This document shows, in pieces, positions 2,449 through 48,401 of a stretch of 64,000 bases of DNA. Within the stretch, counting starts at the first letter, position 1. Each line of letters starts with the position of its first letter. Location: sequence record MT612989.1; one strand, written 5' to 3'. Under the pieces are notes generated by a model, which was not told where the DNA came from, did not search any database, and saw only the letters and a list, made by a program, of their open reading frames with translations. The translations under genes and the position numbers were made by a program.

Positions 2449-2479
2449 ATTATACGTCTGCCAAGGTGGTTATTAAACA
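2449..2479 (-). promoter_or_regulatory. TGTTTA-class (middle-like) promoter for glutaredoxin
   Basis: GTTTAA-N18-TATAAT. Confidence 0.6.
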
Positions 2480-2486
2480 AATCTTA

Positions 2487-2547
2487 CTAATACTTCTAAT
2501 ATTACTAAAAGCACTAATACTACTAAGATGAGACGGAATTTTTCCGC
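2487..2547 (-). repeat. 61-bp dispersed repeat copy 1 with 9-bp periodic TTAG units
   Basis: reverse complement matches 45166-45226 at 60/61 positions. Confidence 0.95.
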
Positions 2548-2554
2548 TCAAACC

Positions 2555-2576
2555 AAAAAAAGCCCCTTTCGGGGCT
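2555..2576 (-). terminator. intrinsic terminator
   Basis: AGCCCC-GAAA-GGGGCT hairpin followed by a U tract. Confidence 0.85.
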
Positions 2577-3518: not shown

Positions 3519-4022
3519 TTATTCACTAATTGACTTCACTTTTTCGATAATTTCAACGATTTCTTTCGCTGAACGATTCGAAAATATGATTGTCGATTTT
3601 TTGCGTCGCTGTACTTCTTTATGCTTTGCTGGGTTTAGATGTCCAAGTTCGCGATCAAGTTCCTTATTTGATAATACACTAGAACGAATCATTACGCGAT
3701 GACTATCAGGCAGTCCAGTAGTCACGTATACATTTAGACCGTGCTCTTCAGAGTCCATACCAGGCTGAGATTCTCGAATCTCCCAAAAATCTGAAGACTC
3801 GCTTTGTAGTTCTGCAAGTAGTTCTTCAGCAGTTGCTTTAGGCTGTGCTTCAGCGCGTACTTTACGTGCTTTCTTCGTCTTAGCAGCTTTCATTGCTTTC
3901 TGACGAAGGTCTGTTAAATAATGACGACGACCTTTCTCATCAACAGCTTGAAAACCGTTTGAGTCTACTGTCATGTTGAAGTAAGCAGCAAGTTGTTCGT
4001 TAGTCAGTGATTGTACATTCAT
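3519..4022 (-). CDS. hypothetical early protein
   Basis: 167 aa ORF with GAGAGA SD downstream of an early promoter. Confidence 0.7.
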   Translation of the reverse strand: MNVQSLTNEQLAAYFNMTVDSNGFQAVDEKGRRHYLTDLRQKAMKAAKTKKARKVRAEAQPKATAEELLAELQSESSDFWEIRESQPGMDSEEHGLNVYVTTGLPDSHRVMIRSSVLSNKELDRELGHLNPAKHKEVQRRKKSTIIFSNRSAKEIVEIIEKVKSISE

Positions 4023-4180: not shown

Positions 4181-5809
4181 ATGATTGGATTTCAACAATT
4201 AAATGAAAACATGAGCGCAACGTACGACTATTATCCGGCTCGCTCGACCAAAGAAAACAAATTCTTTGTGATCGACATGAAAGGCGAAGCCAGAGACATC
4301 GTTGTTTCGTTCACAACTAAAACAAAATCAGATATCGGAAATCGCGGTAAACGTTCTTGGTTCTGTACTGTATCAGCAATGCGCGGCAAAAAAGGCGGTG
4401 TTACTATTCGTGAAATGGGAGATGAACAAAAGCTTCAACAAACTATTGTTAAAGTGGTTCAAGATTTCATGATCAAACGTCGTGCGAATGTCGTTTCAAT
4501 GCGTGTGCAGAAACTAGGTACGGGTAAGATGTTCGACTTGCGCGTTAAAACGTTGTTTAAAAAGCTACGTTACGGCTGTGATACAACTAAGATTATTGGC
4601 GTGGGTGGTGAAGAAATTTCGCAAGATTACAGCTTCTTTATTGTAACCAAACCAGGGTATAATGCCGATAAGCTATTCGAAGCATCTGAAGAAACAATTA
4701 ACGATATTGCGTTAAAAATGTCACTCGAAACTGATATTTCAAGCAAGAAAACGATTATCGTAACTGCCGATGCTGCGTATGACGACTATGAAGATGACGT
4801 ACTAGGTAAATGGGTAGAAGAAAACCCCGCTGCACGTGTTCCAAATGATGTTCTTCAAATGCCTCAATATGAAGCGCGTGTAAGTTCGTCTGTTCGTTCT
4901 CAATTGAATGAAAGCAATGAACATGTTCTTGCTAATGCTGCGAAAGGTTTAATTGATATGAGTTTGAATCTTGAAACTGTGGCAGTTTCATTGAATTCAT
5001 ATATCGCCGAATCGAAGAAGCCTCAAAGCGTTCTGAATAGTATCATGGAATCTCGCTCACGTGCTCATGCAAGTCAGTATGAACGTCTTTCTTTGCAACT
5101 TATGCAGGAAGATTCATTTGCGGGTCTATCGTCACTTACACAAGCGGCTATTGCTAGATACTCCGCGACTCGTTTTTCATGGAAGGTGAATGAAGAGTTA
5201 TTACACGGAACTGGTGTTGATAAAGAATCACAGATTGTCTCACGCATCGACCAAGCGTTTTCTGAAGCTGGTATGATTGCTGGTGGAATGACGTTATATC
5301 GTGGCTGTGAAATGTCAAGTAAACATGTGCGCTCTATTCTTGAATCTGGCTCGTTTGTTTCGACTGCGTTTATCTCAACGTCAATCGACCCTCTTGTTGC
5401 TTGTAAGTTCGTTGAATCAAGCTCTAAGAACATCATTGATTCAACTGCTAAGAATAGTAAATCAGATATGCGTTCTCTGCTTGAGTCAGATAAGAAAATG
5501 AATGTTGTATTCATCATAGAAGCGAGCGGCTTGCCTGTTTTAGCTTCAGGTAAACACGGTATGAAAGACTCAAAAGAGATTATCATCAACCGTAATACGA
5601 TGTTTGAAGCTGACGTTGTTCAAATGTCTGAATACGACGCTGTAATTCGATTGAAAATCAAAGAAGATACGAAGCAAGGTGTATTGTCTGCTTTCAAAAA
5701 GCAAGACCGTTTACACGAGCTTTCAGAAGTAGCTAATTTCATGCGTTCTGTTGATGTAGATGTCGATGCAGATAGACTAACAAAAGAGCGTAGTCCTCTA
5801 ACACCATGA
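4181..5809 (+). CDS. alt: Alt-like NAD:protein ADP-ribosyltransferase
   Basis: C-terminal ART motifs TLYRG, FISTS, xxEIIINR; LNE propeptide; late promoter; position next to gene 30 as in T4. Confidence 0.75.
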   Translation: MIGFQQLNENMSATYDYYPARSTKENKFFVIDMKGEARDIVVSFTTKTKSDIGNRGKRSWFCTVSAMRGKKGGVTIREMGDEQKLQQTIVKVVQDFMIKRRANVVSMRVQKLGTGKMFDLRVKTLFKKLRYGCDTTKIIGVGGEEISQDYSFFIVTKPGYNADKLFEASEETINDIALKMSLETDISSKKTIIVTADAAYDDYEDDVLGKWVEENPAARVPNDVLQMPQYEARVSSSVRSQLNESNEHVLANAAKGLIDMSLNLETVAVSLNSYIAESKKPQSVLNSIMESRSRAHASQYERLSLQLMQEDSFAGLSSLTQAAIARYSATRFSWKVNEELLHGTGVDKESQIVSRIDQAFSEAGMIAGGMTLYRGCEMSSKHVRSILESGSFVSTAFISTSIDPLVACKFVESSSKNIIDSTAKNSKSDMRSLLESDKKMNVVFIIEASGLPVLASGKHGMKDSKEIIINRNTMFEADVVQMSEYDAVIRLKIKEDTKQGVLSAFKKQDRLHELSEVANFMRSVDVDVDADRLTKERSPLTP

Positions 5810-23756: not shown

Positions 23757-24814
23757 TAAATTTTCTTCCATCTGTTAAGTCGATTTGTAGCCATTAGACC
23801 GCTAACGGCATTTTCATAAATGTATTGCTGAATGAACTCAGCAGATACACCAGCTTTGACAAAATCATTGATGTCTTTCTTATCAATAATTTGAGGTGGG
23901 AGCTTATCCCAAATAACAACACGCTCACCCGCTCTGATTAGAACTTGAAGACGCTTTACAACGTCTGGGTGGCGAGGCTCATTATCAAGCGCCCAAATGC
24001 GATTCCCCGCATAGGGTGCATTTTGTGGACTGACTTGTCCACCTACTATAGCACAGCAATTGTAGAGGAATAAACTATCAATCGGGCCCTCAACGAAAAT
24101 AACAGGGTCATCTTCATTGATACGCTCTGTGCCGTATATCTTGTTGAAATCGTCGTCAATTTTAATGGTCATGTATCGTTGAGCATGTTTGTTTGTCAAC
24201 GCACGACCTTGAACAGCAATCAAACCTTCTTTGTTATAGATAGGTATTACCAATCGAGGGTGGTCATTTCTAATCTCACCTTCGTACAAATCTGGGCGAA
24301 GCGTCTTAGCCATTTGAGACCAGCCACGAGTAAACCCAAGCAAATGCCACTTGTCTTTAGGGATTTTTCTAGATTCGAGGTATTTGTGCATCACATGACC
24401 ATCTTTAAGGGCAGTGATATTATAGAAAAGTTGCTCTTCTTGTTCTTTCTCAACGACAGTCGCTTCTTTCTTTTCAACGACTGGTTCAGGTTCGCGTTCT
24501 TTACGCTCACGAGAATTGCGCTCTTTGAATAACTCGACGCGATACTGAGAAAACAACGATGGTTCGTGATCTTTCAAAAAAGTATACAGCGATTCGTTAT
24601 AGTCACAGTTCCAGCAACTACAACGTAAATGAATCTCACCAGAACGTGTCTTAACTTCATTAATCCAGAAACGTGTCTTGTACTTGTTCTTTTTCGAGTC
24701 ACCACAAATCGGGCATCTTGCATTGATTTTGAATGGACGATGACTATGCACCGTAGGGAGTAGTAATCGATGCTGAAGCATCTTGGCGTATTGTATATCA
24801 ATCAATATTTGCAT
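23756..24814 (-). CDS. 61: DNA primase gp61
   Basis: RCPICGDS..K.RF zinc ribbon, CWNC, VEGPIDSLF, LDNEPR, KDIND. Confidence 0.97.
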   Translation of the reverse strand: MQILIDIQYAKMLQHRLLLPTVHSHRPFKINARCPICGDSKKNKYKTRFWINEVKTRSGEIHLRCSCWNCDYNESLYTFLKDHEPSLFSQYRVELFKERNSRERKEREPEPVVEKKEATVVEKEQEEQLFYNITALKDGHVMHKYLESRKIPKDKWHLLGFTRGWSQMAKTLRPDLYEGEIRNDHPRLVIPIYNKEGLIAVQGRALTNKHAQRYMTIKIDDDFNKIYGTERINEDDPVIFVEGPIDSLFLYNCCAIVGGQVSPQNAPYAGNRIWALDNEPRHPDVVKRLQVLIRAGERVVIWDKLPPQIIDKKDINDFVKAGVSAEFIQQYIYENAVSGLMATNRLNRWKKI

Positions 24815-24834
24815 AATTCAACCTCCGTGTAGTG

Positions 24835-24864
24835 ATTATACACGGCATCACGATACGATAAACA
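24835..24864 (-). promoter_or_regulatory. TGTTTA-class promoter for gp61
   Basis: GTTTAT-N17-TATAAT directly after a terminator U tract. Confidence 0.65.
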
Positions 24865-24893
24865 TAAAAAAGCCCCGTTTCCGAGGCGTTTTA

Positions 24894-25373
24894 TTATTCG
24901 AAATGTCTGAACTTCTTCAGCTTTTTCTTTTTCTTTTTCTTACCGATAGTTTCAGGACCTGCATTAGTTACAGCACCAGTCGTTTCACCAGAAGCAATCG
25001 ACTCTGGTGAGCTACTACCGTCACCCGCATCACCTGCAACAACAGCTTCTTCGACTCGAATACACTCTTTCGCGAAATCTTCAGATAACCCGTATTCTTT
25101 TGCAAGCTCAATCAGCAACAAATAAGACGCGCCATAATCAAGTGCTGTTTTACCACCTGGTAATGCACCAACCATGCGCTTGATATTTCTCACAGTAACA
25201 TGAAACATCGTCCAGTTACTTTTCTCTTGTGCAGTTACAGGGTCACGCAACTTCTTACCATCTGCGTCGATGATACCCATTCGATATGCTTCCCAACGTT
25301 CAAAACGAAGATGAAGCAAACGAGACAGACGAAGAGCATAAAAACCATCTGCACCACGTTTAGCTACACTCAT
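24894..25373 (-). CDS. T4 gp30.3-like conserved protein
   Basis: F..WEAY..GIID.DG..L...TxQEK...T.FH..V.NIKR; acidic then basic tail. Confidence 0.7.
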   Translation of the reverse strand: MSVAKRGADGFYALRLSRLLHLRFERWEAYRMGIIDADGKKLRDPVTAQEKSNWTMFHVTVRNIKRMVGALPGGKTALDYGASYLLLIELAKEYGLSEDFAKECIRVEEAVVAGDAGDGSSSPESIASGETTGAVTNAGPETIGKKKKKKKLKKFRHFE

Positions 25374-26197
25374 TATGCCCCCAAGATTTGCTCAAGTTGA
25401 CGATCAAAGATCTTCTCTGCTTCATCAAGTGGTAATGGTACGCTGCGCATGAATTCGTGCAGATTATCTTCGCGAATCAGATTTTCAATAGTACTAGATG
25501 GTACTTTGTTCTTGACTTCAACGATCTCGAATCGTGTTCCACCTACACGTAGGAAGTGACGACCTAGACGGCGATACTCAGCTACTTTGTTCGCTTCTAC
25601 AAATGCAAACACGCGAGTGATACCTTTTTGAATCATAGTCTCTACTTCAGCAAACATCACGCCTTTCGGTGCAACATCGACATCAGAGAACGATTCAAAT
25701 AATTCAACGCGCTCTTGAAGTGATAAAACCTTGTTCTGAGCTTCAGGTACAAACACTTTACCAACAGCACCAACGTGTTCACACGCTTCAGATAATGTTT
25801 TAGTCAATTCTTTATGACCAACTGAAGGAATGCTTGAATCCACGTCCATGATACACGCAGCGTCAATCGCACACTCATTCACAACGGTTTCATGTTCGAA
25901 GAAATCTTTTTCCGAAACGACAAATAGACCCTCATCAAGTTTAGCTGCAATTGCTTCAGCTTCTTGTTGTTGTTTCTTCATCGTTGCTTCTTCTTTTTCA
26001 GCAGCAGATTCTTTGTCAAACATGGTGATTTTGCCGCGAATTGCGTCTCGAACACGAATGTCCATCATCGGTGTGATGTTCGCCCCGAGTTCTTTTTTCT
26101 TTTGCGTATATAGTTTCTCGATTTCAACTACACCGTCTTTGGTAGTACATTGGTGAACCGACGCAATAAGTTCTTCCAATTTATCTTTGATAGCCAT
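25373..26197 (-). CDS. protein with a degenerate cytidylyltransferase-like (HxGH) domain
   Basis: IPSVGHKEL..KVF..LSLQERVELF..GITRV..V..NKVAEY layout. Confidence 0.5.
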   Translation of the reverse strand: MAIKDKLEELIASVHQCTTKDGVVEIEKLYTQKKKELGANITPMMDIRVRDAIRGKITMFDKESAAEKEEATMKKQQQEAEAIAAKLDEGLFVVSEKDFFEHETVVNECAIDAACIMDVDSSIPSVGHKELTKTLSEACEHVGAVGKVFVPEAQNKVLSLQERVELFESFSDVDVAPKGVMFAEVETMIQKGITRVFAFVEANKVAEYRRLGRHFLRVGGTRFEIVEVKNKVPSSTIENLIREDNLHEFMRSVPLPLDEAEKIFDRQLEQILGA

Positions 26198-26200
26198 TAG

Positions 26201-27046
26201 CTACTCCTCGTAAACAATCGTATTTTTAGTAATTCTTGATTCGAATACAACTTCAACACGTACACCATAAGGCAATGCCTTAGAACGGCGACATGCATCA
26301 TTTCTAATCAACATATACGGGTGATATACAGTATCTTTAATATCTTTCGCGTTCAACAAAACATCACCGTTAATATGCAAGGTACCGCGTTTGAATACAA
26401 AATCATCTAGTGTAAAGCTATTGACTACAACAAGACCGTTATTGAGAATGTCTGAACCAAATACAACATGATTTATTTCGTCGTCTCGTAGTCTGCGTGC
26501 GATTGGCTGGCTAAGTCTCTTCACTTTACCATCGTCAGAATAGTCCGATAATGTAACCATCTTCTTGACTATCATTTGTGATAAAAGCTTACGAGCTTCA
26601 GTGCCGTGAATAACGTCAGTACTAGCCCAACGCTCGGCATTTGATTTTTTAATCGAAATCGGAAAATCGCCGCTTACGGTCTTCAATACCATATCGGCTT
26701 TTTTGTTGTTTTTTGTGTCGTGACCAGTCATTTCAATCGACTGAACACCTTTTATTACTCGTCGACCAATTTTAATCCGAGTACAGCCAGAATCAATGTG
26801 TTGCTTTACAATATTATAGAAATTGCGTTCATTCTCGATGCCCGGATTAGATGTTGGTTTGACGTATACTCTGCATTTTTCCATCTGTATACAACCAATT
26901 GAACTGCCTGGGTCGCACTTCTTGTACGTCCCGTCAAGCTCTTTCGCAAGTTTAACAATTAGACCAAGTCGATTTTCATCTGTGTAGATAACGATCTTTC
27001 GGCTATTGATAATTCTCGCGTCATATCTTAACAAAACATCTATCAT
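26201..27046 (-). CDS. PD-(D/E)XK-like nuclease-fold protein
   Basis: GIENE...KADMVL..PISIKK; late promoter upstream. Confidence 0.5.
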   Translation of the reverse strand: MIDVLLRYDARIINSRKIVIYTDENRLGLIVKLAKELDGTYKKCDPGSSIGCIQMEKCRVYVKPTSNPGIENERNFYNIVKQHIDSGCTRIKIGRRVIKGVQSIEMTGHDTKNNKKADMVLKTVSGDFPISIKKSNAERWASTDVIHGTEARKLLSQMIVKKMVTLSDYSDDGKVKRLSQPIARRLRDDEINHVVFGSDILNNGLVVVNSFTLDDFVFKRGTLHINGDVLLNAKDIKDTVYHPYMLIRNDACRRSKALPYGVRVEVVFESRITKNTIVYEE

Positions 27047-27079
27047 AGTGCATGAACACCATCTTTAATACCATACCAG

Positions 27080-27087
27080 TATTTAGA
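27080..27087 (-). promoter_or_regulatory. late promoter variant TCTAAATA
   Basis: 34 nt upstream of ATG 27046. Confidence 0.65.
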
Positions 27088-27110
27088 TGTTCATGCAGAT
27101 AGACTACCAC

Positions 27111-27635
27111 TTAGAAGTCGTAACTTACCTCTTTGGACTCACGACGTTTGTCAAGAAGTTGTCGCAGATCAGTTAAACGAATCATCGGCTGACCGATGTT
27201 ACGCTGCAAGTTATCACAACAAACGTTCACGTAACGATAGTCATCAATCGTTGCGTAATGCACGTGCCCGTGAATGCTGAAATGACCACGCAGTTCATCG
27301 GGGTGTAATGGAAAATGACTCAACCAACCCAACTTTTTGTACTTTTCACAACCGCGAATCACGTCAAACGCACGCATGTAGCTTGAAACAGGAAGATCGT
27401 CATGATTCCCGCCATATTGTACTTTACGACCCGGTAAACCAGCAAGAATTCCAACAGCTTCTTCAGTAAATGCAGTATCACCAAGCATAATCACAGTGTC
27501 ACGCTTGCGAACGTTCTTCAACCAGAAGTCAACAATCCAGTCGGTATTCGCTTGAGTGTCTTCAATGTCATCCCGAAACTTACCAATATTTTTGTGACCT
27601 AAATGCAGATCACTTGTAATCCAAACACAACTCAT
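27111..27635 (-). CDS. calcineurin-like phosphoesterase
   Basis: SDLHLGH, LGD, GNHD, SHFP, HGHVH. Confidence 0.9.
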   Translation of the reverse strand: MSCVWITSDLHLGHKNIGKFRDDIEDTQANTDWIVDFWLKNVRKRDTVIMLGDTAFTEEAVGILAGLPGRKVQYGGNHDDLPVSSYMRAFDVIRGCEKYKKLGWLSHFPLHPDELRGHFSIHGHVHYATIDDYRYVNVCCDNLQRNIGQPMIRLTDLRQLLDKRRESKEVSYDF

Positions 27636-28111
27636 TAATTTCTCTCTTTATCAATAACCATTTCATCATTTACCCGAACGTACAAGATTTGATTATCAGA
27701 GCCGCGCCACGCTTTCTGCGTTGGTTGATGTCTCTTGTATCGTCCGTCAATGAAAACATCAATATAATTCATTATCTCTAAATGATAAACATGAGATAAT
27801 TTGTAACCGCTCCACAACCAAATGTCTTTATCGGGATATCGCTCTTTCACTGATTTACAAATACGCAATATTTCGTCGCGATTGCTCGGGTGCAACGGGT
27901 CACCTCCTGAAAGACTCAGCCCATCGTGCTGCTCTAAGCTCGTCAAAACGTCTCTAAGCGTTTCTTCAGTGAAATCGATACCATCGTTCGAGTCCCACGT
28001 AGATTCGTTGTAGCAGCCCTTACAGCGATGCTCACAACCAGAAACGAAGATGCTCAATCGAACACCTTCGCCGTTTGCAAAATCAAATTCGTTAATCTTC
28101 TGATACTTCAC
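27635..28111 (-). CDS. nrdG: anaerobic RNR activase (radical SAM)
   Basis: NGEGVR, GCEHRCKGCYN, GGDPL, DGRY, RGSDNQ. Confidence 0.96.
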   Translation of the reverse strand: MKYQKINEFDFANGEGVRLSIFVSGCEHRCKGCYNESTWDSNDGIDFTEETLRDVLTSLEQHDGLSLSGGDPLHPSNRDEILRICKSVKERYPDKDIWLWSGYKLSHVYHLEIMNYIDVFIDGRYKRHQPTQKAWRGSDNQILYVRVNDEMVIDKERN

Positions 28112-28694
28112 TTACCTGCCATCCCGCAAAAACATCAATATTGAGGCGACAAGATTTTTTGATACCATCATTCGATACATGAACAATATTTTTGTTCATA
28201 GCTTCGCGTCGAGAAAATGTAAACGGTACATCATCTGCAACAACTGTGATGAAATCATCATTACAAAACACAACTGTTGCTTCTTCTTGTCTCGGCTCGA
28301 ATTGACAGTTCAAGTATACGTCAATCGTGTCACCTTCGTTGATACGAACATATTCCATCTTCGTTTCAATCGTTTCTTTATTGTATGACAGCACACCGTC
28401 GTGATTAAACAATTCTTGAAACGTTTCTCGTTCTTCAAAACGTGAAATGATACCAAAGCTAGAATTATCGCTGACTCGACTGCCTTGAACAATAAACGTC
28501 AAAGAACTCATATAATCATACAAAACACAGTCGCCAGATTCGTCTTGATATATAAATCGAGCATCTATAGTATCACTCGCACTTAAACTCAAGCTGCTAC
28601 TACTCATAGGTTCGACGTATACTCTAACATCTTTACCAATTTCTAAAGCTGTCGGCGTGTATGTAGGTATTCTTCGTTCTTTTTGCGTAAACAT
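28092..28694 (-). CDS. hypothetical protein
   Basis: 200 aa ORF in operon. Confidence 0.6.
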   Translation of the reverse strand: MFTQKERRIPTYTPTALEIGKDVRVYVEPMSSSSLSLSASDTIDARFIYQDESGDCVLYDYMSSLTFIVQGSRVSDNSSFGIISRFEERETFQELFNHDGVLSYNKETIETKMEYVRINEGDTIDVYLNCQFEPRQEEATVVFCNDDFITVVADDVPFTFSRREAMNKNIVHVSNDGIKKSCRLNIDVFAGWQVSEVSED

Positions 28695-28695
28695 T

Positions 28696-29112
28696 TTAAA
28701 ACTCCCAATTTATTTTAGACGTGTGACCATGTACTAACGTCCAACAGCCGCCCCGAACCCATTGACCAGACAACTTACGGCGATAGTATTTGCCACCCGT
28801 TGATGTCGTGATCATCTTCATTGTTTTTGAAATCTTCGTGATTACACCGTCGGGATGACTGTCACCATTGAAACAATAGCTAACTGAATCACCTACACGT
28901 GGCTTTTTGATAATGTCAAAGCGCGGCAAGCAACCTGAACCTGCGTCCACAACCATGTATAAATCTTGGTCGAGCATGTTGCAGACTTCAGTAACTCGCT
29001 CTAATGTTTTCCAATCTCTACGAGATTCAACAGTGTGACCCTCTTGGCGCCACTGTTCAGCTACTGAGTGTTCGTCGATAACGCTGCAAGTTGTCAAGTT
29101 GATGTATAGCAT
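28696..29112 (-). CDS. hypothetical early protein (MLYINL...)
   Basis: GAGAGA SD after an early promoter. Confidence 0.7.
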   Translation of the reverse strand: MLYINLTTCSVIDEHSVAEQWRQEGHTVESRRDWKTLERVTEVCNMLDQDLYMVVDAGSGCLPRFDIIKKPRVGDSVSYCFNGDSHPDGVITKISKTMKMITTSTGGKYYRRKLSGQWVRGGCWTLVHGHTSKINWEF

Positions 29113-29155
29113 AATGTTTCTCTCTCTGTTAGTCGATGTCGTCTCGATGAAGTTA

Positions 29156-29184
29156 ATATTACGCACTTATGATTCGTGTTGCAA
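29156..29184 (-). promoter_or_regulatory. early promoter
   Basis: TTGCAA-N17-TAATAT followed by CATCGAGACG. Confidence 0.7.
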
Positions 29185-29205
29185 CCTTTTTCTTCGTCAA
29201 AAAAC

Positions 29206-29229
29206 AAAAAAAGCGCCCGAAGGCGCTTT
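29206..29229 (-). terminator. intrinsic terminator after nrdD
   Basis: AAAGCGCC-TTCG-GGCGCTTTTTT (UUCG loop). Confidence 0.85.
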
Positions 29230-29230
29230 C

Positions 29231-31066
29231 TTAACAGTGTTTAACTCGATTTTGCATTTCGACAGTCTTGCCGTGATTCCACCCACGAGCACCCGGGTTA
29301 CCGAGATAACCGCAGACACGTCTCGTTACATTGAGCTTTTCAGGGTCGCGTTCACCACAAACAGGACAAGAATAACCCAGCGAATCACCATGAGCTTCAC
29401 CAGACCAACCACACGTACACTGATCAATCGGGGTATTCGTACCGAAGTAAGCTACTTTAGTGTAAGCATAATCCCATACGCGCTCTAGACCTTTGATGTT
29501 ATCTCGCATATTCGGGAACTCAGCATAACAGATGAAACCACCGTTTGCATGAATTGGGTATGCAGCTTCAAAATCAATTTTCTCAAATGGGTTAACTTTC
29601 TTGAACACGTCTAAGTGAAACGAGTTTGTGTAATAGTCTTTGTCATTGATACCTGTAATGACACCGTATTTCTCTTGGTCGAGACGACAGAAACGATCAC
29701 ACAGCGATTCACTTGGTGTACTGTACAGACTGAAACCGTAGCCCGTCAGTTCTTTCCATGCATCTGTGTACGCTCTAAGAGTTTCCACAATCTTTTCAGC
29801 GAGGAATTGTTTGTGCTGTGACTCAAACGTATGCATGTCTTTATCTGGCGAAAGCAACGTTACTGCTTCGTGTAACCCGATATAACCAAGCGAGATACTT
29901 GAACGACCGTGTTTGAAAACTTCACTGACTTTATCAGTTGGCTTCAAGCGCACGCCCATTGCACCTTCACAGTATAGAATCGGAGCAACTGATGCAGTTA
30001 CATCATCAAAACGCTTAATACGCAACATCAATGCTTCGTAAGCTAGTGTACAACGCTCGTGTAAGATCTCGAAGAAGCGTTCAGTATCACCCGATGCTTC
30101 AATAGCAATACGCGGGATATTGATTGAGACGACGCCTAAGTTATTACGACCATCGAATACCGTTTCACCATCTTCGTTCTTCCAGTCACCCAAGAATGAG
30201 CGACAGCCCATTGGAGACTTAAACCCACCAGTCGTTTCAACTAGTTTGTCATAGTTCAAAATGTCTGGGTACATACGCTTACTTGCACATTCAAGAGCTA
30301 ACTTTTTGATACCGTAGCACGGGTCGCCTTCTTTTAGGTTCACGCCGTCTCTCAATGTGAAAACAAGCTTAGGGAAAATAGCAGTTTTCTTAGTCTTACC
30401 TAGACCTGCAATACGATTCTGAAGAATACTTTTTTGAATAAGTTTTTCTTCCCACGACGTACCTAACCCGAAGTTGATTGTCGTGAATGGTGTCTGACCG
30501 TTTGAAGTCTGCATCGTATTGACTTGATATTCAAACGTCTGGAATGCATCGAACGTTTCCTTTTCAACACGCTTTCGTGCAAAGATAGCAGCTTTAGAAT
30601 CAGAGTCGGGATGTTCTTCGCGACCTACTTCGAGCCATTTATAATATGACTTACGAACATAAGGTGCTAGGACTTCGTCGATTCTATTGATCGTGTTACC
30701 GCCGTAGATATGGCTACTTACTTGCTGAATAATCTGAGTTACAACAGTGGCAGCAGTGCTAATACTGTTTGGTTCTTCGATTTCAGCATTACCCATTTTG
30801 AAACCGCCTTCAAACATGCCTTTGATATCAATAAGCATACAGTTGAATTGCGGGAATAATGGGCTGTAGTCAAGGTCATGAAAATGAATATCGCCGTCGA
30901 TATGTGCATCTGCAATATGCTTCGGTAGATAGTCTTCAAGTGCGTAATGTTTCGACACTGTGCCAGCTACTAAGTCACGCATTGTAGGGATTACTTTCGA
31001 ATCTTTATTTGCATTCTCTTTGTTGTTACCCGAACCGCTAACAATGTCTAAAATGTCGTGTTTCAT
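29231..31066 (-). CDS. nrdD: anaerobic ribonucleoside-triphosphate reductase
   Basis: HFHDLDY, NCMLID, MGCRSF, RNNLGVVSIN, STPSE, YYTNS, RRVCGYLG glycyl-radical motif. Confidence 0.98.
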   Translation of the reverse strand: MKHDILDIVSGSGNNKENANKDSKVIPTMRDLVAGTVSKHYALEDYLPKHIADAHIDGDIHFHDLDYSPLFPQFNCMLIDIKGMFEGGFKMGNAEIEEPNSISTAATVVTQIIQQVSSHIYGGNTINRIDEVLAPYVRKSYYKWLEVGREEHPDSDSKAAIFARKRVEKETFDAFQTFEYQVNTMQTSNGQTPFTTINFGLGTSWEEKLIQKSILQNRIAGLGKTKKTAIFPKLVFTLRDGVNLKEGDPCYGIKKLALECASKRMYPDILNYDKLVETTGGFKSPMGCRSFLGDWKNEDGETVFDGRNNLGVVSINIPRIAIEASGDTERFFEILHERCTLAYEALMLRIKRFDDVTASVAPILYCEGAMGVRLKPTDKVSEVFKHGRSSISLGYIGLHEAVTLLSPDKDMHTFESQHKQFLAEKIVETLRAYTDAWKELTGYGFSLYSTPSESLCDRFCRLDQEKYGVITGINDKDYYTNSFHLDVFKKVNPFEKIDFEAAYPIHANGGFICYAEFPNMRDNIKGLERVWDYAYTKVAYFGTNTPIDQCTCGWSGEAHGDSLGYSCPVCGERDPEKLNVTRRVCGYLGNPGARGWNHGKTVEMQNRVKHC

Positions 31067-35474: not shown

Positions 35475-36401
35475 TTACTCGTCTAGCTCTAGGTCAGCTA
35501 GTAGTGCGTCTAGCTCGTCATCGACAGAATCAGTCACTGGCTCTTGTGAAGCAGGAGTGTCGTCAGTGTCGATAGTTGCGCTTGGTTTAGCAACTGTACG
35601 AGGTGCATTTGCTTGAGCAGGAGCACCAGTGTTCAGTTGAGCTTCAAGATTTTGAGCAGCCGTAGATGCTTTAGACTGAGCAGCGCCAGTCACTTGAAGA
35701 AAACGCTTCTGAAGGTCAGCTTCAGATTTAAACGCAGACGGTGCAATGATTGCGTTTAGGTCGTGCATTTGGTCCCAGACTTCTTTCAGTTTAGCTTCGT
35801 CACCGCCGTATAGCTCAGTGCTTGGGCCGAATTTAGAGTCGTCGTAGTTAGGGAAACCAGATACTTTCTTAGCTTTCAAGCTGAAGTTAGCACCATCGAA
35901 TACACAAGTCACGTCCATGCCCGGTACACCTAGATCTTCATCTGCTTGAGCAGCTTGAGTGATCTTGTCAAGAATTTTCTTACCGAAACGGTATTTGAAA
36001 ACTTTGCCTTCATTTTCTGGTGCAGCTTCATCTTTGATTACAACGATGTTAGCCCAGTAAGAAAGAGTACGCTTGCGTTTACGTGCAATGTTTTGGTTAT
36101 CTTCGTTTTCAGTTTTCCAAAGCTCGCCGTTAGCTTGGCAGCATGGACATGGAAGATCGATAGTCGAAGGACAGTTTTCGATGTACCAGTTACCGTTTTC
36201 TTTGAAACCGTGTGTGAAGATTTTTACAAATGGTAGGTCGTCTTCGCCTTTAGCAGGCAGGAAGCGAATCACCGCAGAACCATTACCAAGCTTGTCAGTA
36301 GAAAGTTTCCACTCGTCAGCATTGTCGAATGACTTTTTGCTTGACATTTGCTCTAGTTTTTCTTGAAGTTTTGCTGGAGATTTGCGTTTGAACATAGACA
36401 T
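35475..36401 (-). CDS. 32: single-stranded DNA-binding protein gp32
   Basis: MSMFKRKS, GSAVIRFLP, WYIENCPST, C..C, YWANI, YRFGKKI, acidic tail. Confidence 0.97.
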   Translation of the reverse strand: MSMFKRKSPAKLQEKLEQMSSKKSFDNADEWKLSTDKLGNGSAVIRFLPAKGEDDLPFVKIFTHGFKENGNWYIENCPSTIDLPCPCCQANGELWKTENEDNQNIARKRKRTLSYWANIVVIKDEAAPENEGKVFKYRFGKKILDKITQAAQADEDLGVPGMDVTCVFDGANFSLKAKKVSGFPNYDDSKFGPSTELYGGDEAKLKEVWDQMHDLNAIIAPSAFKSEADLQKRFLQVTGAAQSKASTAAQNLEAQLNTGAPAQANAPRTVAKPSATIDTDDTPASQEPVTDSVDDELDALLADLELDE

Positions 36402-36402
36402 A

Positions 36403-36463
36403 TTGTATTTTACCTTGTATTTTATAGTATGATATAGTATCGTATAGTGTGTTATTGTATTTT
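36403..36463 (-). promoter_or_regulatory. gp32 mRNA leader with short repeats (candidate autoregulatory operator)
   Basis: 3x ACTATA at 10-nt spacing and 3x AAAATACAA; G-poor. Confidence 0.5.
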
Positions 36464-37105
36464 ACTTTGATTTTTTATTTGAATAAACATTTCTTTAGCA
36501 AGAACTTCGTCGATTTTCAGCAACTTATCATATGCTAAAGCTCGTGTCTTGAACTCGTGCCAGAAGATATCGTCTCCGTAATCTTTGTCGATTACAGGTA
36601 CGAAGTTCAATAATCTATTCAGAATTACGAACGTCTCAATTGAGATAGTATTTCGTAACACGAGTTGCATTATAACGGGATGCCCTTCGCCTCTAAACAA
36701 ATCTTTGAATTTTTTATTCTCTCTATTTATAAGAGTAAAAATCGAAAGTAGTTCATTTTTGTAGTGTTGACTGTAAATTTCCATAAATCCCGTATGTTTC
36801 AACCAGAATTCATGAGCGTCAGCACCTGCAATCTCATAAGAAATCGCATTTGGGTTCGCTGCTAAGTTACTAACAAGCAACTGATAGCAATCATTCAATG
36901 TTAGCCGTTTGGCTAGCCGTTCAAAAAACACCTTATCTGAACGCTTCTCGAACGCAGATCTAGGTGTTTTCATTCCGAGTTTATACTTGGAGATGTCGTA
37001 CTTTCCGCCCATATGCGCCTTTACAGCACAATAAACACGAAATACGCTATACCCATTGACCCAAGTCCGAGGCAGAACCAAATCGACTTCTAATAGTCTT
37101 TTCAT
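36452..37105 (-). CDS. 59: helicase loader gp59
   Basis: NGYSVFRVY..VK.HM.GKYD..KY, FEKRSDK.FFE.LA. Confidence 0.93.
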   Translation of the reverse strand: MKRLLEVDLVLPRTWVNGYSVFRVYCAVKAHMGGKYDISKYKLGMKTPRSAFEKRSDKVFFERLAKRLTLNDCYQLLVSNLAANPNAISYEIAGADAHEFWLKHTGFMEIYSQHYKNELLSIFTLINRENKKFKDLFRGEGHPVIMQLVLRNTISIETFVILNRLLNFVPVIDKDYGDDIFWHEFKTRALAYDKLLKIDEVLAKEMFIQIKNQSKIQ

Positions 37106-45117: not shown

Positions 45118-45140
45118 AAGAGCCCTTCGGGGCTTTTTTT
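45118..45140 (+). terminator. intrinsic terminator
   Basis: AGCCC-TTCG-GGGCT followed by a U tract. Confidence 0.9.
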
Positions 45141-45165
45141 ATACGCGAAGCGAAAACGGTAAGAG

Positions 45166-45236
45166 GCGGAAAAATTCCGTCTCATCTTAGTAGTATTAGT
45201 GCTTTTAGTGATATTAGAAGTATTAGAGGGATTAGT
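45166..45236 (+). repeat. 61-bp dispersed repeat copy 2, extended to six 9-bp-spaced TTAG units
   Basis: TTAGTAGTA TTAGTGCTT TTAGTGATA TTAGAAGTA TTAGAGGGA TTAGTG. Confidence 0.95.
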
Positions 45237-45266
45237 GTTTAAGCAACCAATGATGAAATGTATACT
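45236..45266 (+). promoter_or_regulatory. TGTTTA-class promoter for uvsY
   Basis: GTTTAA-N18-TATACT. Confidence 0.65.
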
Positions 45267-45284
45267 TGATGACGCGAGGTTATT

Positions 45285-45698
45285 ATGAAGCTACAAGATT
45301 TAAAAATTGAATATCACGAAGACGTGAAAATTGACACAACTGCTTTAGAAACAGCAGCTATTCGAATTCCCGTTCTTCATGCGAAGTGGCTTGCATACCG
45401 AGCCGATGCAAGACAACTACTTATCAAAGCTGAAATGAAAATGGAAGCTGTGAGAAAAGACCGCTGGCTCTTTTATAGCGGCAAACATGACGATGAAGTT
45501 TGTGATTTCATCGTAGAAAAGAGTGAAATGAAATATGCTCTTGCGGGTGATGAATATCTTCAACGTGCAATTGCTACTTTTCAACACATGAAAGATGTGT
45601 TATCATTCATCGAAGAAGCTTTGAAAGGCATTAGTCAAATGGGCTTCACAATCAAACACATTATTGACAACAGAAAAATTGAGAGTGGTATAGTATGA
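45285..45698 (+). CDS. uvsY: recombination mediator UvsY
   Basis: D.KID.T.L, LHAKWL, R..YSGK, EKSEMK..LAGD. Confidence 0.92.
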   Translation: MKLQDLKIEYHEDVKIDTTALETAAIRIPVLHAKWLAYRADARQLLIKAEMKMEAVRKDRWLFYSGKHDDEVCDFIVEKSEMKYALAGDEYLQRAIATFQHMKDVLSFIEEALKGISQMGFTIKHIIDNRKIESGIV

Positions 45699-46108
45699 TC
45701 ATCGAAACAATTAAAACAACACGCCTACAAGCTCGTAAAGACCGTAACAACGCAGTTGCGTCTGTACTCGGTGTCATTATGGGTGAACTTGACCGTCGTC
45801 AAAAACACGATGATGAGTCTTGCATCAAAGTAATCTCAAGCGCGATTGACAACAACAAACTTGCTCTTGAACACGCACAAGGCGACCATGTAGACATTCT
45901 GAACGCAGAAAACGCAGTTCTTGAGTCTCTACTACCTGCAAAAATCTCTGAATCAGATCTAGACACGTTCGTTTCTAACTTTGTTCTAGAAACTGGTGCT
46001 GATTCTATGCGTGACATGGGTAAACTAATGGGCGCTCTAAAAGCTACAGGTAAAGTTTTCGATGGTGGTAAAGCGTCTCAGTTGTTCAAACTAGCAATCG
46101 GTCTGTAA
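45695..46108 (+). CDS. GatB/YqeY-domain protein
   Basis: LQARKDR, E..VLESLLP, MRDMGKLMGALK, DG.KAS. Confidence 0.85.
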   Translation: MIIETIKTTRLQARKDRNNAVASVLGVIMGELDRRQKHDDESCIKVISSAIDNNKLALEHAQGDHVDILNAENAVLESLLPAKISESDLDTFVSNFVLETGADSMRDMGKLMGALKATGKVFDGGKASQLFKLAIGL

Positions 46109-46594: not shown

Positions 46595-48127
46595 CTATGC
46601 GGCAAGATCTACTTTCTTGACTGCGTATTTGAACTCTTCTTGGTTGTAAAGCTCAATACGTTGCATACCATGCTTCATAGTATAATTTACGTGAGTGTAC
46701 GGCTTCTTAGCGTTCTTGCGTTTCGGCTTGATTGCTAAGTTGTCGATAATATCAAACAGCTTCGCAGTTACCTTCGAACCGTGCTTACGTAGAATACGAC
46801 CAATCGACTGTAAGTTGATGATCTTGCTCTTCGTTGGGTGCGCAAAGATTACATTGTGCAGTTTCTTGATACTGATACCAGTAGAAAACACACCATACGA
46901 TGCTACGATAATAGCCCCGTCAATATCTTCTGCAATCTTCTTCACATGCGTACGGTCGTCTGTTTTAGTCTCACCAGATACGTAGAACACTTTCTCTGGG
47001 TCATATACGCTCTTCAATGCTTCGTAAAGCAATTTACCGTGTTTGATGTTCTTGAACAGCAATAGCGTGTTTTCGCCTTTCTTCGCGCTCAAGTGATGCG
47101 CAAGCTTAATCAAGTAACGATTTCGCTGCTTGTTCTCAAGAATGAATTTCATTTCTTCTTGATATGAACTGCCCTTCATTTCATCACGTAACGGCTGTGG
47201 GTATTCAAGCATTAAACAGTTTATCTTCAGATCTGTTACTTGCCCTTCTTCCATTAGCTGTGCAGTCGAAACAGGTCGGAAAATATCACCGAATGAACCA
47301 ACGTACTGTAGAATATTCGCTTTACCGTCTCGAAGTGAGCCAGTAAGACCGATTTTGTATTCACAGTTTGTCATTTTCTTGATTATACCGTCTAATGACT
47401 TACCTGTTGCTAAGTGACACTCATCGACTAAAAGCATACCGAATTGGTCAAACCATTCTTTCGGTTGTTTTACAGCAGATTGCCATGTAGATACAACGAT
47501 TCGGCAGTCACCGATTGCGTCTCGATCAACCCCACCACGAATCTGATAAATGTCGTTGTGTTCGAATAAACGATAATCTAAGAAGTCATCGCGCATTTGC
47601 TGGACAAGTGCAGTTGTAGGTACAATCACTAATACTTTCTGAAGTTCGTGCTCTTCTTGTGCTAAGAACCATTTAGTAATCAGTGACTGAATTAATGATT
47701 TACCCGCAGATGTTGGTAGATTCAATAGACTGTGTTGGTTGTTAATTCCGTGAAACACAGAGTCCATCTGATACCAATACGGTGAAATCTTATTCGACCC
47801 TGAGTAGATGTCAATAGACTCAACCCATGCTTCGAAATCTTCACGAGAAATTTTCTCAATCGGATCTAGCATTGGATCGGTTTCAATCGTATACATCATA
47901 TTTGATGCAAACGCTTTAGCTTGTCCGACTAGACCGTATGGTAATAGACCTTGATACGTCATTAGTCGAATTTTGCCATCCCAAATGCCCATTTTAAATT
48001 TCGGGTTAAATTTGTACCCATCTGTTAGAAATGAGAAATAGTCAATCATTTCGTGAGTGATGCTTGGCTCGGCTACGACTCTCGCATAACTCTCATCGTG
48101 GTACTCAATTTTAATGTCACATGTCAT
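46595..48127 (-). CDS. uvsW: DNA helicase UvsW
   Basis: WDGKIRL, PYWYQ, LPTSAGKS, VDECH, GLTGS, LQSIGR.LR; probable start MTCDIK at 48127. Confidence 0.96.
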   Translation of the reverse strand: MTCDIKIEYHDESYARVVAEPSITHEMIDYFSFLTDGYKFNPKFKMGIWDGKIRLMTYQGLLPYGLVGQAKAFASNMMYTIETDPMLDPIEKISREDFEAWVESIDIYSGSNKISPYWYQMDSVFHGINNQHSLLNLPTSAGKSLIQSLITKWFLAQEEHELQKVLVIVPTTALVQQMRDDFLDYRLFEHNDIYQIRGGVDRDAIGDCRIVVSTWQSAVKQPKEWFDQFGMLLVDECHLATGKSLDGIIKKMTNCEYKIGLTGSLRDGKANILQYVGSFGDIFRPVSTAQLMEEGQVTDLKINCLMLEYPQPLRDEMKGSSYQEEMKFILENKQRNRYLIKLAHHLSAKKGENTLLLFKNIKHGKLLYEALKSVYDPEKVFYVSGETKTDDRTHVKKIAEDIDGAIIVASYGVFSTGISIKKLHNVIFAHPTKSKIINLQSIGRILRKHGSKVTAKLFDIIDNLAIKPKRKNAKKPYTHVNYTMKHGMQRIELYNQEEFKYAVKKVDLAA

Positions 48128-48152
48128 GATTTTTCTCTCTATGCGAGTTTTG

Positions 48153-48178
48153 TCTAAATATGTATAACTGTATTTATA
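48153..48178. promoter_or_regulatory. divergent late promoters
   Basis: TCTAAATA on + (48153-48160) and TATAAATA on - (48171-48178). Confidence 0.7.
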
Positions 48179-48191
48179 GAGGTCTAAATTC

Positions 48192-48401
48192 ATGACAAGA
48201 GACGAAATGTTTTACAAGATGAAAGATGGTTGCTTTAAGTTTGAGCATAAAGGCAAGAAATATCACGCGACTTTATGCAAGCATTATCTACCACATCTTG
48301 ATTGCAATCGAGAAGAACAACGTAAAAATGAAAACGGTGCAGATAATGAACTTACATTTTTCGATTTAAATCGAAATGTGTGGGTAACAATTGAATGCTA
48401 A
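48192..48401 (+). CDS. hypothetical protein
   Basis: GAGG SD; ATL..LP....FFD.....W pattern. Confidence 0.7.
   Translation: MTRDEMFYKMKDGCFKFEHKGKKYHATLCKHYLPHLDCNREEQRKNENGADNELTFFDLNRNVWVTIEC

What the first reader, a model, noticed from the sequence alone, without database searches (positions are those of the whole stretch)
45166..45266. Candidate replication origin at uvsY: six TTAG iterons abutting the promoter
Seen: six TTAG units at exact 9-bp spacing run directly into TGTTTAA-N18-TATACT upstream of uvsY. Established: in T4, ori(uvsY) is a middle promoter whose transcript forms the priming R-loop, and oriE uses iterons. Inference: this phage combines a uvsY promoter origin with an iteron array, and copy 1 at 2.5 kb marks a second origin. 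A 9-bp period is off the helical repeat, which suits a protein filament or ssDNA binding better than same-face dsDNA binding.
Basis: partly seen in the sequence, partly recalled or inferred. Interest (0 to 1): 0.75.

Follow-up and report, generated by a model that had tools for sequence, protein, structure and literature searches.

The report
Six-copy hairpin plus TTAG-array repeat
The TTAG array in front of uvsY is real, but it is one of six near-identical, evenly spaced, same-oriented copies of an undescribed ~100-bp intergenic element found in all KVP40-like Vibrio phages; it may mark replication start or loading sites, but it is not a T4-style uvsY origin.

Summary
Six TTAG units sit at exact 9-bp spacing (45187-45235) and run into GTTTAA-N18-TATACT, 19 nt before the uvsY start codon. 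The window is a KVP40-like Vibrio phage, 100% identical to vB_ValM_R10Z/R11Z over the 1.7 kb tested.

The array is not specific to uvsY. R10Z has exactly six copies of one composite element: a GCGAAGC mini-hairpin motif, a 5-7-bp stem-loop, an invariant TCATC, then 5-7 TTAG-N5 units. KVP40 and VH7D also have six copies at the same loci; F86 has five.

TTAG is 26-27 of 27 conserved at units 3-6, while the spacers drift. The sense strand is almost free of C and unstructured. All copies point the same way as the flanking genes. Four of six follow a terminator and five of six precede an outward early-type promoter at variable distance. The copies are over-dispersed round the genome (P about 0.005).

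The T4 ori(uvsY) model fails its defining tests: the promoter has sigma-70 -35 geometry, not a MotA box; the genus lacks motA; and the conserved AT-rich tract lies upstream of the promoter.

My best reading (about 0.35) is a strand-specific protein-assembly lattice on unwound DNA that serves replication initiation or loading. Rivals are a dsDNA operator or roadblock, an RNA lattice, and a PeSL-like cassette. The function is untested.

The parts
45121..45140 (+). Intrinsic terminator of the upstream 897-aa tail-fibre hinge (gp35-like) ORF: AGCCC-TTCG-GGGCT followed by a T run
   Evidence: Read from the sequence; folds as the strongest hairpin in the RNA fold; the same hairpin is listed for the minus strand by the terminator scan.
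45145..45151 (+). GCGAAGC mini-hairpin motif, the 5' part of the repeat unit
   Evidence: Folds as a hairpin with DNA parameters. A GCGNAGC or GCGNNAGC motif lies about 22 nt (range 18-42) upstream of the hairpin region in 16 of 27 distinct copies, and the variants differ only in loop positions. The motif matches the DNA mini-hairpin consensus (PMC13037366).
45165..45181 (+). Stem-loop GGCGGAA-AAA-TTCCGTC (7 pairs, one of them G-T)
   Evidence: There are 13 distinct variants across phages. The three core pairs are kept in 10-11 of 13, and two pairs show GC-to-CG double changes (the GGCCC...GGGC type).
45182..45186 (+). Invariant linker TCATC
   Evidence: 27 of 27 distinct copies; the last three bases were part of the search pattern.
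45187..45235 (+). Six TTAG units at a 9-nt period; 71% A+T, one C in 49 nt, unstructured as a single strand
   Evidence: units 3-6 are TTAG in 26-27 of 27 copies, except 24 of 27 at the A of unit 6; 96th percentile for AT; one of 16 loci with at most 1 C or G in 49 nt; minimum free energy 0.
45237..45266 (+). Early-type sigma-70-like promoter: GTTTAA (-35 hexamer TTTAAG), 17-18-nt spacer, TATACT
   Evidence: The -35 and -10 boxes are conserved while the spacer diverges in KVP40, D480 and F86. The motif class occurs 20 times in R10Z against 4.65 in shuffles. It was not called by the strict TTGACA scan.
45276..45698 (+). Shine-Dalgarno GAGG and the uvsY ORF (ATG at 45285)
   Evidence: Pfam UvsY, E 3.6e-50.
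2554..2576 (-). Terminator (AGCCCC-GAAA-GGGGCT plus a T run) after the SprT-like ORF, just upstream of copy 2
   Evidence: SprT-like domain.
2478..2549 (-). Second copy of the element: stem-loop, TCATC, five TTAG units (2526-2487) and a degenerate sixth unit TTTG; no GCGAAGC motif
   Evidence: (E 5.2e-20).
2449..2477 (-). Promoter TTTAAT-N17-TATAAT for the 79-aa glutaredoxin ORF (2430-2191, minus strand)

Best explanation
SHOWN: the uvsY array is one copy of a conserved, oriented, roughly 100-bp composite element. Its parts are a GCGNAGC mini-hairpin motif, 14-18 nt of spacer, a short stem-loop with an A-rich loop, an invariant TCATC, and 5-7 TTAG-N5 units. It occurs five or six times per genome in KVP40-like Vibrio phages, at the same intergenic loci, evenly spread round the genome and always pointing with the flanking genes. 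INFERRED: it works as a strand-specific protein-assembly site on unwound DNA. The AT-rich, C-free array is the easiest local stretch to melt. In five of six copies an early promoter fires away from it, which should feed negative supercoils into it. In four of six copies a terminator shields it from incoming RNA polymerase. Once it is open, the two small hairpins would form on the top strand and mark the 5' edge. The structure-free tract would then present TTAG every 9 nt to an oligomeric protein: six or seven protomers, as a ring or a short filament. I think the most likely purpose is to start or load DNA replication (an origin, or a helicase/primosome loading site), at about one site per 41 kb, similar to the density of T4's five origins. 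It is not a T4-type R-loop origin driven by the uvsY promoter.
For: There are exactly six copies in R10Z and nothing else above noise. KVP40 and VH7D have six each at the same loci; F86 has five. The element is present in all 51 matching Vibrio phage records and in a few metagenome contigs, but in no bacterial genome. TTAG units 3-6 are 26-27 of 27 conserved while the spacers vary and avoid C. The hairpin shows compensatory GC-to-CG changes, and two types coexist in one genome, which argues for base pairing and against a dimer-bound palindrome. Variants of the GCGNAGC motif change only loop positions; this motif is far more stable in DNA than in RNA and occurs at phage priming sites. As single-stranded DNA the element folds into two hairpins plus an unstructured array. 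The arrays rank in the 96th-99th percentile for AT content and are among only 16 loci with extreme C or G depletion. Copy spacing is over-dispersed: minimum gap 25.9 kb (P 0.007), CV P 0.004. All six copies are co-oriented with transcription. Placement between a terminator and an outward promoter is hard to reconcile with an RNA role. T4 uses at least five dispersed origins in 169 kb.
Against: There is no replication data of any kind. No initiator or DNA-binding domain was found in the genes flanking the copies. There are no DnaA boxes. T4 origins share no common motif, and even the T4 oriE iterons have no proven role. A 9-nt period with a 4-nt core is unlike classical 17-22-bp iterons. One copy (the lipoprotein locus) has neither terminator nor promoter and forms the Shine-Dalgarno region of an mRNA, so the element tolerates, or may need, transcription. 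One or two hairpin variants are broken. The spacing statistic was chosen after seeing the data and represents a single evolutionary sample. GC skew follows transcription only and is uninformative.
Confidence: 0.35

Rival explanations
1. It is a double-stranded DNA operator or roadblock array. A small phage DNA-binding protein (for example of ribbon-helix-helix type) coats the 6-7 TTAG boxes. It would either regulate the neighbouring early promoter or insulate the downstream unit from read-through out of the upstream genes.
For: A short core motif with a fixed short period and 6-7 copies resembles known operator or centromere arrays of small DNA-binding proteins (own knowledge). Five of six copies lie 0-27 nt upstream of a promoter, and the array abuts the -35 box at uvsY in four diverged phages. 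Orientation with the genes is explained.
Against: The array-to-promoter distance varies and is not consistently phased: 49, 51, 62, 72 and 76 nt from unit 1 to the -35 box. One copy has no promoter. The six downstream genes share no function. Most promoters of the same class have no array. This model does not explain the hairpin covariation, the C-free strand asymmetry or the even genome spacing. No candidate regulator sits next to any copy.
Confidence: 0.2
2. It is an RNA-level element: a nucleating hairpin followed by a structure-free UUAG lattice that a ring or cooperative RNA-binding protein coats. This would control translation, processing or stability of the downstream cistron, in the manner of the T4 gene 32 operator.
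For: The orientation is always sense. G-U pairs are tolerated in the stem. The tract is C-free and unstructured. At the lipoprotein locus the array is certainly inside an mRNA, and its fifth unit supplies the Shine-Dalgarno sequence in R10Z, KVP40 and K566. The phage uses a repeat-rich unstructured leader before gene 32.
Against: In four of six copies the element lies after an intrinsic terminator, and in five of six it lies before the promoter that serves the downstream gene. It is therefore in neither the 3' UTR nor the 5' UTR of the main transcripts. The distance to the start codon ranges from 0 to about 130 nt. Rfam gives no match. GCGNAGC is a DNA-type motif rather than an RNA-type motif. 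Even spacing is unexplained.
Confidence: 0.2
3. It is a PeSL-like recombination cassette or selfish repeat, that is, a terminator-promoter module kept similar by gene conversion. The TTAG tract would be no more than its AT-rich upstream region and would have no function of its own.
For: The layout of terminator stem-loop, AT-rich region, sigma-70-like promoter, SD and ATG is how PeSLs are described in nt-1 and KVP40. The hairpin type and the GCGAAGC motif switch between orthologous loci, which shows exchange between copies. Phage 1.081.O carries a tandem duplication.
Against: The terminators and promoters are not the conserved part; the hairpin and the TTAG register are. TTAG is invariant across phages whose spacers have diverged, which indicates purifying selection on the register. 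There are only 5-6 copies, at conserved core loci rather than in hyperplastic regions. The PeSL papers do not describe this element.
Confidence: 0.1
4. One reading: a T4-type ori(uvsY) in which the uvsY promoter transcript forms the priming R-loop, reinforced by oriE-like iterons.
For: The position matches T4 oriF. An active-looking promoter adjoins an AT-rich repeat.
Against: There is no MotA-box geometry and no motA in the genus. The transcript runs away from the conserved AT-rich array. The same element sits at five other loci with different or absent promoters. The region downstream of the promoter is uvsY coding sequence of ordinary composition (65-68% AT).
Confidence: 0.04
5. It is a small protein-coding gene across the element, as annotated in some GenBank records.
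For: Two reading frames are open across the array. D480, F86 and K566 carry 'hypothetical protein' CDSs there.
Against: No start codon is conserved. TTAG is invariant at all codon positions while other positions vary without a third-base pattern. In two loci the upstream ORF ends inside the element.
Confidence: 0.01

Closest known systems
T4 oriF = ori(uvsY) and oriG = ori(34), R-loop origins (Kreuzer and Brister review, PMC3016281)
   Same: The genomic position is the same (5' side of uvsY; genes 34 and 35 lie just upstream here). A promoter sits next to an AT-rich tract, and the phage has several dispersed sites per genome.
   Different: The T4 origins need a MotA-dependent middle promoter and an unwinding element downstream of it, and they share no sequence with each other. 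Here the promoter is of early sigma-70 type, the genus lacks motA, the conserved AT-rich tract is upstream, and six sites share one sequence.
[quoted passage not shown]
   Same: Both are evenly spaced short direct repeats next to an early-mode promoter in a T4-like phage, conserved in relatives.
   Different: Here the period is 9 nt with a 4-nt core, there are six copies per genome rather than one locus, and hairpins are attached. Even in T4 the iterons have no demonstrated link to origin activity.
PeSL composite terminator-promoter cassettes of T4-like phages, including nt-1 and KVP40 (PMC2839356, PMC4122927)
   Same: They are intergenic, oriented with the genes, ordered stem-loop then AT-rich region then sigma-70-like promoter then SD and ATG, and subject to exchange between copies.
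   Different: PeSLs are numerous, cluster in hyperplastic regions, and their conserved parts are the terminator and promoter. Here those parts vary. The conserved part is an extra roughly 75-100-bp hairpin plus TTAG lattice, with only 5-6 copies at core loci.
Single-strand initiation signals and primase-dependent complementary-strand origins (G4, St-1, alpha3, RSF1010 ssiA) carrying GCGNAGC-type mini-hairpins (PMC13037366)
   Same: They use strand-specific small hairpins, including the same mini-hairpin consensus, next to a single-stranded tract.
   Different: Those act in ssDNA phages and plasmids with host or plasmid primases. None carries a periodic tetranucleotide lattice. No priming has been shown here.
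Short-period operator or centromere arrays bound by small ribbon-helix-helix proteins (ParG tetramer boxes, omega heptads) - from my own knowledge, not tested
   Same: Both have a 4-7-bp core motif repeated 6-12 times at a fixed 7-9-bp period, upstream of promoters.
   Different: Those arrays have a cognate gene next door and act on duplex DNA. Here no such gene was found, and the hairpin covariation and strand asymmetry point to a single-stranded form.
T4 gene 32 translational operator (a structured 5' nucleation site plus an unstructured repeat-rich lattice reaching the RBS) - from my own knowledge
   Same: Both combine a hairpin with a long structure-free repeat tract. One copy (lipoprotein locus) reaches the RBS.
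   Different: Five of six copies lie upstream of the promoter and so are not in the leader. The binder must read TTAG specifically.

Membership tests
T4 oriF/oriG-type R-loop origin | MotA-dependent middle promoter (MotA box in the -30 region plus a sigma-70 -10 box) | tested here: not met
   TGTTTAA ends 18 nt before TATACT, which is -35 geometry. The promoter belongs to a GTTTAN-N16-18-TATAAT class with 20 members against 4.65 expected. KVP40 and nt-1 have asiA but no recognisable motA.
T4 oriF/oriG-type R-loop origin | A+T-rich unwinding element downstream of the promoter, entered by its transcript | tested here: not met
   The conserved AT-rich tract (71-78% AT) lies upstream of the promoter. 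Downstream is SD plus uvsY coding sequence at 65-68% AT, against 59% for the genome.
T4 oriF/oriG-type R-loop origin | Located at the 5' end of uvsY (synteny with oriF) | tested here: met
   UvsY Pfam match; the element ends 19-50 nt before the ATG. The same element also lies at five non-uvsY loci.
T4 oriF/oriG-type R-loop origin | Phage-dependent autonomous replication of a plasmid carrying about 100 bp; persistent R-loop | not testable with these tools
   Needs infection experiments.
T4 oriE-type iteron cluster | Cluster of evenly spaced short direct repeats | tested here: met
   5-7 TTAG units at an exact 9-nt period. T4 uses 12-nt repeats.
T4 oriE-type iteron cluster | Dependence on a nearby early-mode promoter and on RepEB | not tested
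   An early-type promoter is adjacent in five of six copies, but dependence cannot be tested and repEA/repEB homologues were not searched for.
Classical iteron origins (lambda O, plasmid Rep type) | Iterons of about 17-22 bp in helical phase | tested here: not met
   9-bp period with a 4-bp invariant core.
Classical iteron origins (lambda O, plasmid Rep type) | Cognate initiator gene adjacent; host DnaA boxes | tested here: not met
   Flanking ORFs show no DNA-binding or Rep domain in Pfam or PHROGs. No DnaA box with at most 1 mismatch lies within -150 to +250 of five copies; the lipoprotein copy has one chance-level hit.
PeSL cassette | Terminator stem-loop, then a sigma-70-like promoter, SD and start codon in one intergenic module | tested here: met
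   True for four of six copies, including uvsY and glutaredoxin.
PeSL cassette | Many copies, concentrated in hyperplastic regions, flanking indels; the conserved parts are the stem-loop and promoter | tested here: not met
   There are six copies at conserved loci. The terminators and promoters differ between copies, while the hairpin plus TTAG lattice is the conserved part.
Single-strand initiation (ssi) or G4-type priming signal | Strand-specific hairpins, including the GCGNAGC mini-hairpin, formed in ssDNA | tested here: inconclusive
   The motif is present in 16 of 27 distinct copies with loop-only variation. The second stem has two compensatory pairs, but one or two variants are broken.
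Single-strand initiation (ssi) or G4-type priming signal | Primase- or primosome-dependent priming at the site | not testable with these tools
   Biochemical assay needed.
Gene 32-type translational operator | The element lies in the mRNA leader and extends to the RBS of the regulated gene | tested here: not met
   This holds only for the lipoprotein-locus copy. In five of six copies the promoter lies between the array and the gene.

The most novel reading that the evidence does not exclude
KVP40-like phages carry six sequence-identical, evenly spaced, oriented replication-initiation or helicase-loading sites. Each would be an unwinding lattice of 6-7 TTAG registers bounded by DNA hairpins and read on single-stranded DNA by a dedicated hexameric or heptameric phage protein. 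This would be the first sequence-defined multi-origin system in a T4-like phage and a new class of 9-nt 'single-strand iteron'.
Probability: 0.25. Interest if true: 0.8.

Novelty: new variant of a known kind. Interest (0 to 1): 0.55.

Why it matters
How T4-like phages outside the T-even group start replication is unknown. They lack MotA, the T4 origins share no motif, and the KVP40-group genome papers I could read only guessed origins from GC skew. A single conserved element present five or six times per genome gives that question a concrete, mutable target. Even if the element is not an origin, a lattice of 6-7 invariant TTAG registers kept across the genus implies an unidentified sequence-specific oligomeric binder, acting on DNA or RNA, in phages used for aquaculture phage therapy and in the Vibrio natriegens laboratory system. 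It also corrects spurious 'hypothetical protein' calls in several GenBank records.

Tried and rejected
1. Rfam scan of the region on both strands found nothing near the gathering scores.

2. I asked whether the element is borrowed from the host. A scan of 185,579 bacterial and archaeal genomes with CATC plus four TTAG units returned only unrelated 9-mer tandem repeats.

3. Generic TTAG-N5 patterns in IMG/VR and metagenomes mostly hit unrelated coding or satellite 9-mers. Only patterns that include the hairpin recover the family.

4. The small-ORF reading was rejected. No start codon is conserved, and TTAG is invariant at every codon position.

5. The MotA-type middle promoter was rejected on geometry and on the literature.

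6. DnaA boxes are absent.

7. Cumulative GC skew follows transcription direction and shows no feature at the copies.

8. I looked for analogous arrays upstream of uvsY in other T4-like contigs and found none. uvsY homologues at about 30% identity have coding sequence right up to the start.

9. I looked for a binder among the genes flanking the copies and found only unknown-function PHROGs, Alc, Acb1 and a tail-fibre chaperone.

10. The strict sigma-70 consensus scan called no promoter at uvsY. The promoter call therefore rests on cross-phage conservation and on the genome-wide motif class.

11. The original KVP40 genome paper (PMC180978) is not held, so I cannot exclude that it mentions the repeat. 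Two PeSL papers and two other genome papers do not.

Full report
**What is there.** The window is a KVP40-like (Schizotequatrovirus) Vibrio phage. The 1.7 kb around the finding is 100% identical to vB_ValM_R10Z and R11Z and 83.5% identical to KVP40. TTAG starts at 45187, 45196, 45205, 45214, 45223 and 45232, an exact 9-bp period. Four such units in register occur 5 times in the window against 0.00 expected, all in this array or in a second array at 2487-2526 on the minus strand.

The array is followed by TGTTTAA, an 18-nt gap, TATACT, GAGG and the ATG of a 137-aa ORF. That ORF is UvsY (PF11056, E 3.6e-50). Upstream lie:
- the stop codon and intrinsic terminator of the 897-aa gp35-like ORF (45121-45140);
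- a GCGAAGC motif (45145-45151);
- a stem-loop GGCGGAA-AAA-TTCCGTC (45165-45181);
- the linker TCATC.

**It is one of six copies.** A scan of the whole R10Z genome (fetched) finds six arrays. A profile search gives six hits at E of 2e-19 or better and nothing else below E about 7. The six copies lie upstream of:
- an unknown ORF next to the DNA methyltransferase (R10Z 19741, minus strand);
- a glutaredoxin (65060, minus strand; this is the copy at 2.5 kb in the window);
- uvsY (107731, plus strand);
- fibritin/wac (135604, minus strand);
- dNMP kinase, gene 1 (161524, plus strand);
- a lipoprotein ORF (211501, minus strand).

All six point the same way as the genes on both sides. KVP40 and VH7D each have six copies at the same loci. 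The more distant F86 has five, lacking the lipoprotein locus. Phage 1.081.O has two tandem copies with seven units each before gene 1, and D480 and K566 carry the uvsY and lipoprotein copies. BLAST finds the element in 51 records, all Vibrio phages. A few marine metagenome contigs carry it, and no bacterial genome does.

**What is conserved.** I compared 27 distinct copies.
- TCATC and the TTAG of units 1-2 are invariant; this is partly by construction, because they were in the search pattern.
- TTAG of units 3-6 is kept in 26-27 of 27 copies, with occasional TTCG, except the A of unit 6 (24 of 27).
- The 5-nt spacers vary but are almost free of C and usually end in A.
- The arrays hold 0-1 C in 49 nt and are 71-78% A+T. 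They rank in the 96th-99th percentile of the genome and are six of only 16 loci with such strand asymmetry.

The stem-loop has 13 variants. Its three core pairs are kept in 10-11 of them. Two pairs show GC-to-CG double changes, and both hairpin types coexist in one genome. G-T pairs occur, and one or two variants are broken. This favours base pairing, and so a single-stranded form, over a palindromic protein site.

A GCGNAGC or GCGNNAGC motif lies about 22 nt (range 18-42) upstream of the hairpin region in 16 of 27 copies. Its four variants differ only in the loop. This is the consensus of the DNA mini-hairpin, which is much less stable as RNA and occurs at phage priming sites. Folded as single-stranded DNA, the element gives two hairpins and a completely unstructured array.

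The hairpin type and the GCGAAGC motif switch between orthologous loci of R10Z and KVP40, so the copies exchange sequence.

**Context.** Four of six copies follow an intrinsic terminator. In the other two, the upstream ORF ends inside the left part of the element (…K-S-E-A…stop). Five of six are followed by a promoter that fires away from the array. Its boxes are conserved across phages while the spacer diverges.

The uvsY promoter belongs to a genome-wide class, GTTTAN-N16-18-TATAAT, with 20 members against 4.65 in shuffles. Most members have no array. The distance from unit 1 to the -35 box is 49, 51, 62, 72 and 76 nt, so 'abutting the promoter' holds only for the uvsY and glutaredoxin copies. 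At the lipoprotein locus there is no promoter, and the fifth unit supplies the Shine-Dalgarno sequence in three phages.

The six copies are over-dispersed on the 247-kb circle, with gaps of 25.9-55.4 kb: P 0.007 for the minimum gap and P 0.004 for the CV. GC skew tracks transcription only.

**Comparison with T4 origins.** T4 oriF and oriG are defined by a MotA-dependent middle promoter plus a downstream A+T-rich unwinding element in which the transcript forms the R-loop. T4 origins share no motif. The oriE iterons are 12-nt repeats of unproven role next to an early promoter. KVP40 and nt-1 have asiA but no recognisable motA.

In this phage the promoter has -35 geometry, the conserved AT-rich tract is upstream of it, and the element recurs at five other loci. 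The T4 ori(uvsY) mechanism is therefore not supported; only the position is shared. The closest architectural relatives are the oriE iteron cluster and the PeSL terminator-promoter cassettes described for nt-1 and KVP40. In PeSLs, however, the terminator and promoter are the conserved parts and the copies are many. The PeSL papers do not mention this lattice, and neither do two other genome papers. The original KVP40 paper could not be read.

**Mechanism.**
- Shown: a conserved, oriented, six-copy composite element with a selected TTAG register, a paired stem, and a structure-free, easily melted tract.
- Inferred: it acts as a single strand and is read by an oligomer of six or seven protomers at 9 nt each.

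I favour DNA over RNA for four reasons. Most copies sit between a terminator and the promoter of the next gene. The upstream motif is a DNA-type mini-hairpin. Even spacing suggests a genome-scale role. And an outward-firing promoter plus an upstream terminator is what one would want in order to unwind and protect such a tract. Among genome-scale, orientation-dependent DNA functions, replication initiation or helicase/primosome loading fits best (about one site per 41 kb; T4 has at least five origins in 169 kb). My confidence is about 0.35.

The rivals are:
- a duplex operator or roadblock array (0.2);
- an RNA lattice like the gene 32 operator (0.2), supported by the lipoprotein copy and the uniform sense orientation;
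- a PeSL-like cassette with no function of its own (0.1);
- a small ORF (0.01).

No binder was found among the flanking genes, there are no DnaA boxes, and Rfam gives no match.

**Verdict.** The element appears undescribed and is a good experimental handle. Its function is open, so interest is moderate to high (0.55).

Noticed in passing
window 36402-36470, minus strand: The 5' leader of the gp32 (ssb) ORF (35475-36401, minus strand) is G-poor and unstructured, with repeated AUACUAUA and AAAUACAAU motifs right up to the AUG. It looks like the counterpart of the T4 gene 32 autoregulatory translational operator.
   Followed up: partly
window 3519-4022 (minus), 4181-5809 (plus), 715-1227 (minus): An Alc homologue (PF17527, E 9.8e-78), an Alt-like RNA polymerase ADP-ribosyltransferase and the gp55 late sigma factor (R10Z annotation) cluster around the second copy of the element.
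   Followed up: partly
R10Z coordinates 39998, 60297, 84206, 90154, 114705, 152984, 154865, 169709, 235739; the window equivalents of 84206, 90154 and 114705 are roughly 21660, 27610 and 52160: Besides the six arrays and the gene 32 leader, nine more loci have at most 1 C or at most 1 G in 49 nt. These may be further single-strand lattices or leaders.
   Followed up: no
L139 365-526, L140 323-526, L141 396-485: The GenBank records of phages D480, F86 and K566 annotate small 'hypothetical protein' CDSs across the element. These are probably spurious gene calls.
   Followed up: yes
L138 about 380-660: Phage 1.081.O carries two tandem copies of the whole element, each with seven TTAG units, upstream of the gene 1 homologue.
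   Followed up: partly
window 45695-46108, plus strand: The gene immediately after uvsY encodes a YqeY/GatB-like protein (PF09424, E 2.1e-15). uvsW lies convergent at 46595-48193 on the minus strand.
   Followed up: yes
R10Z 24522-29280 and 194763-195647 (outside the window): A full set of 7-deazaguanine (preQ0 pathway) genes is annotated, which suggests modified G in the phage DNA. This could matter for any protein that reads the G of TTAG.
   Followed up: no
window versus R10Z: The window is not an exact substring of MT612988. The two element copies map with offsets that differ by 10 bp, so the source is a very close relative (possibly R11Z) or differs by a small indel.
   Followed up: no
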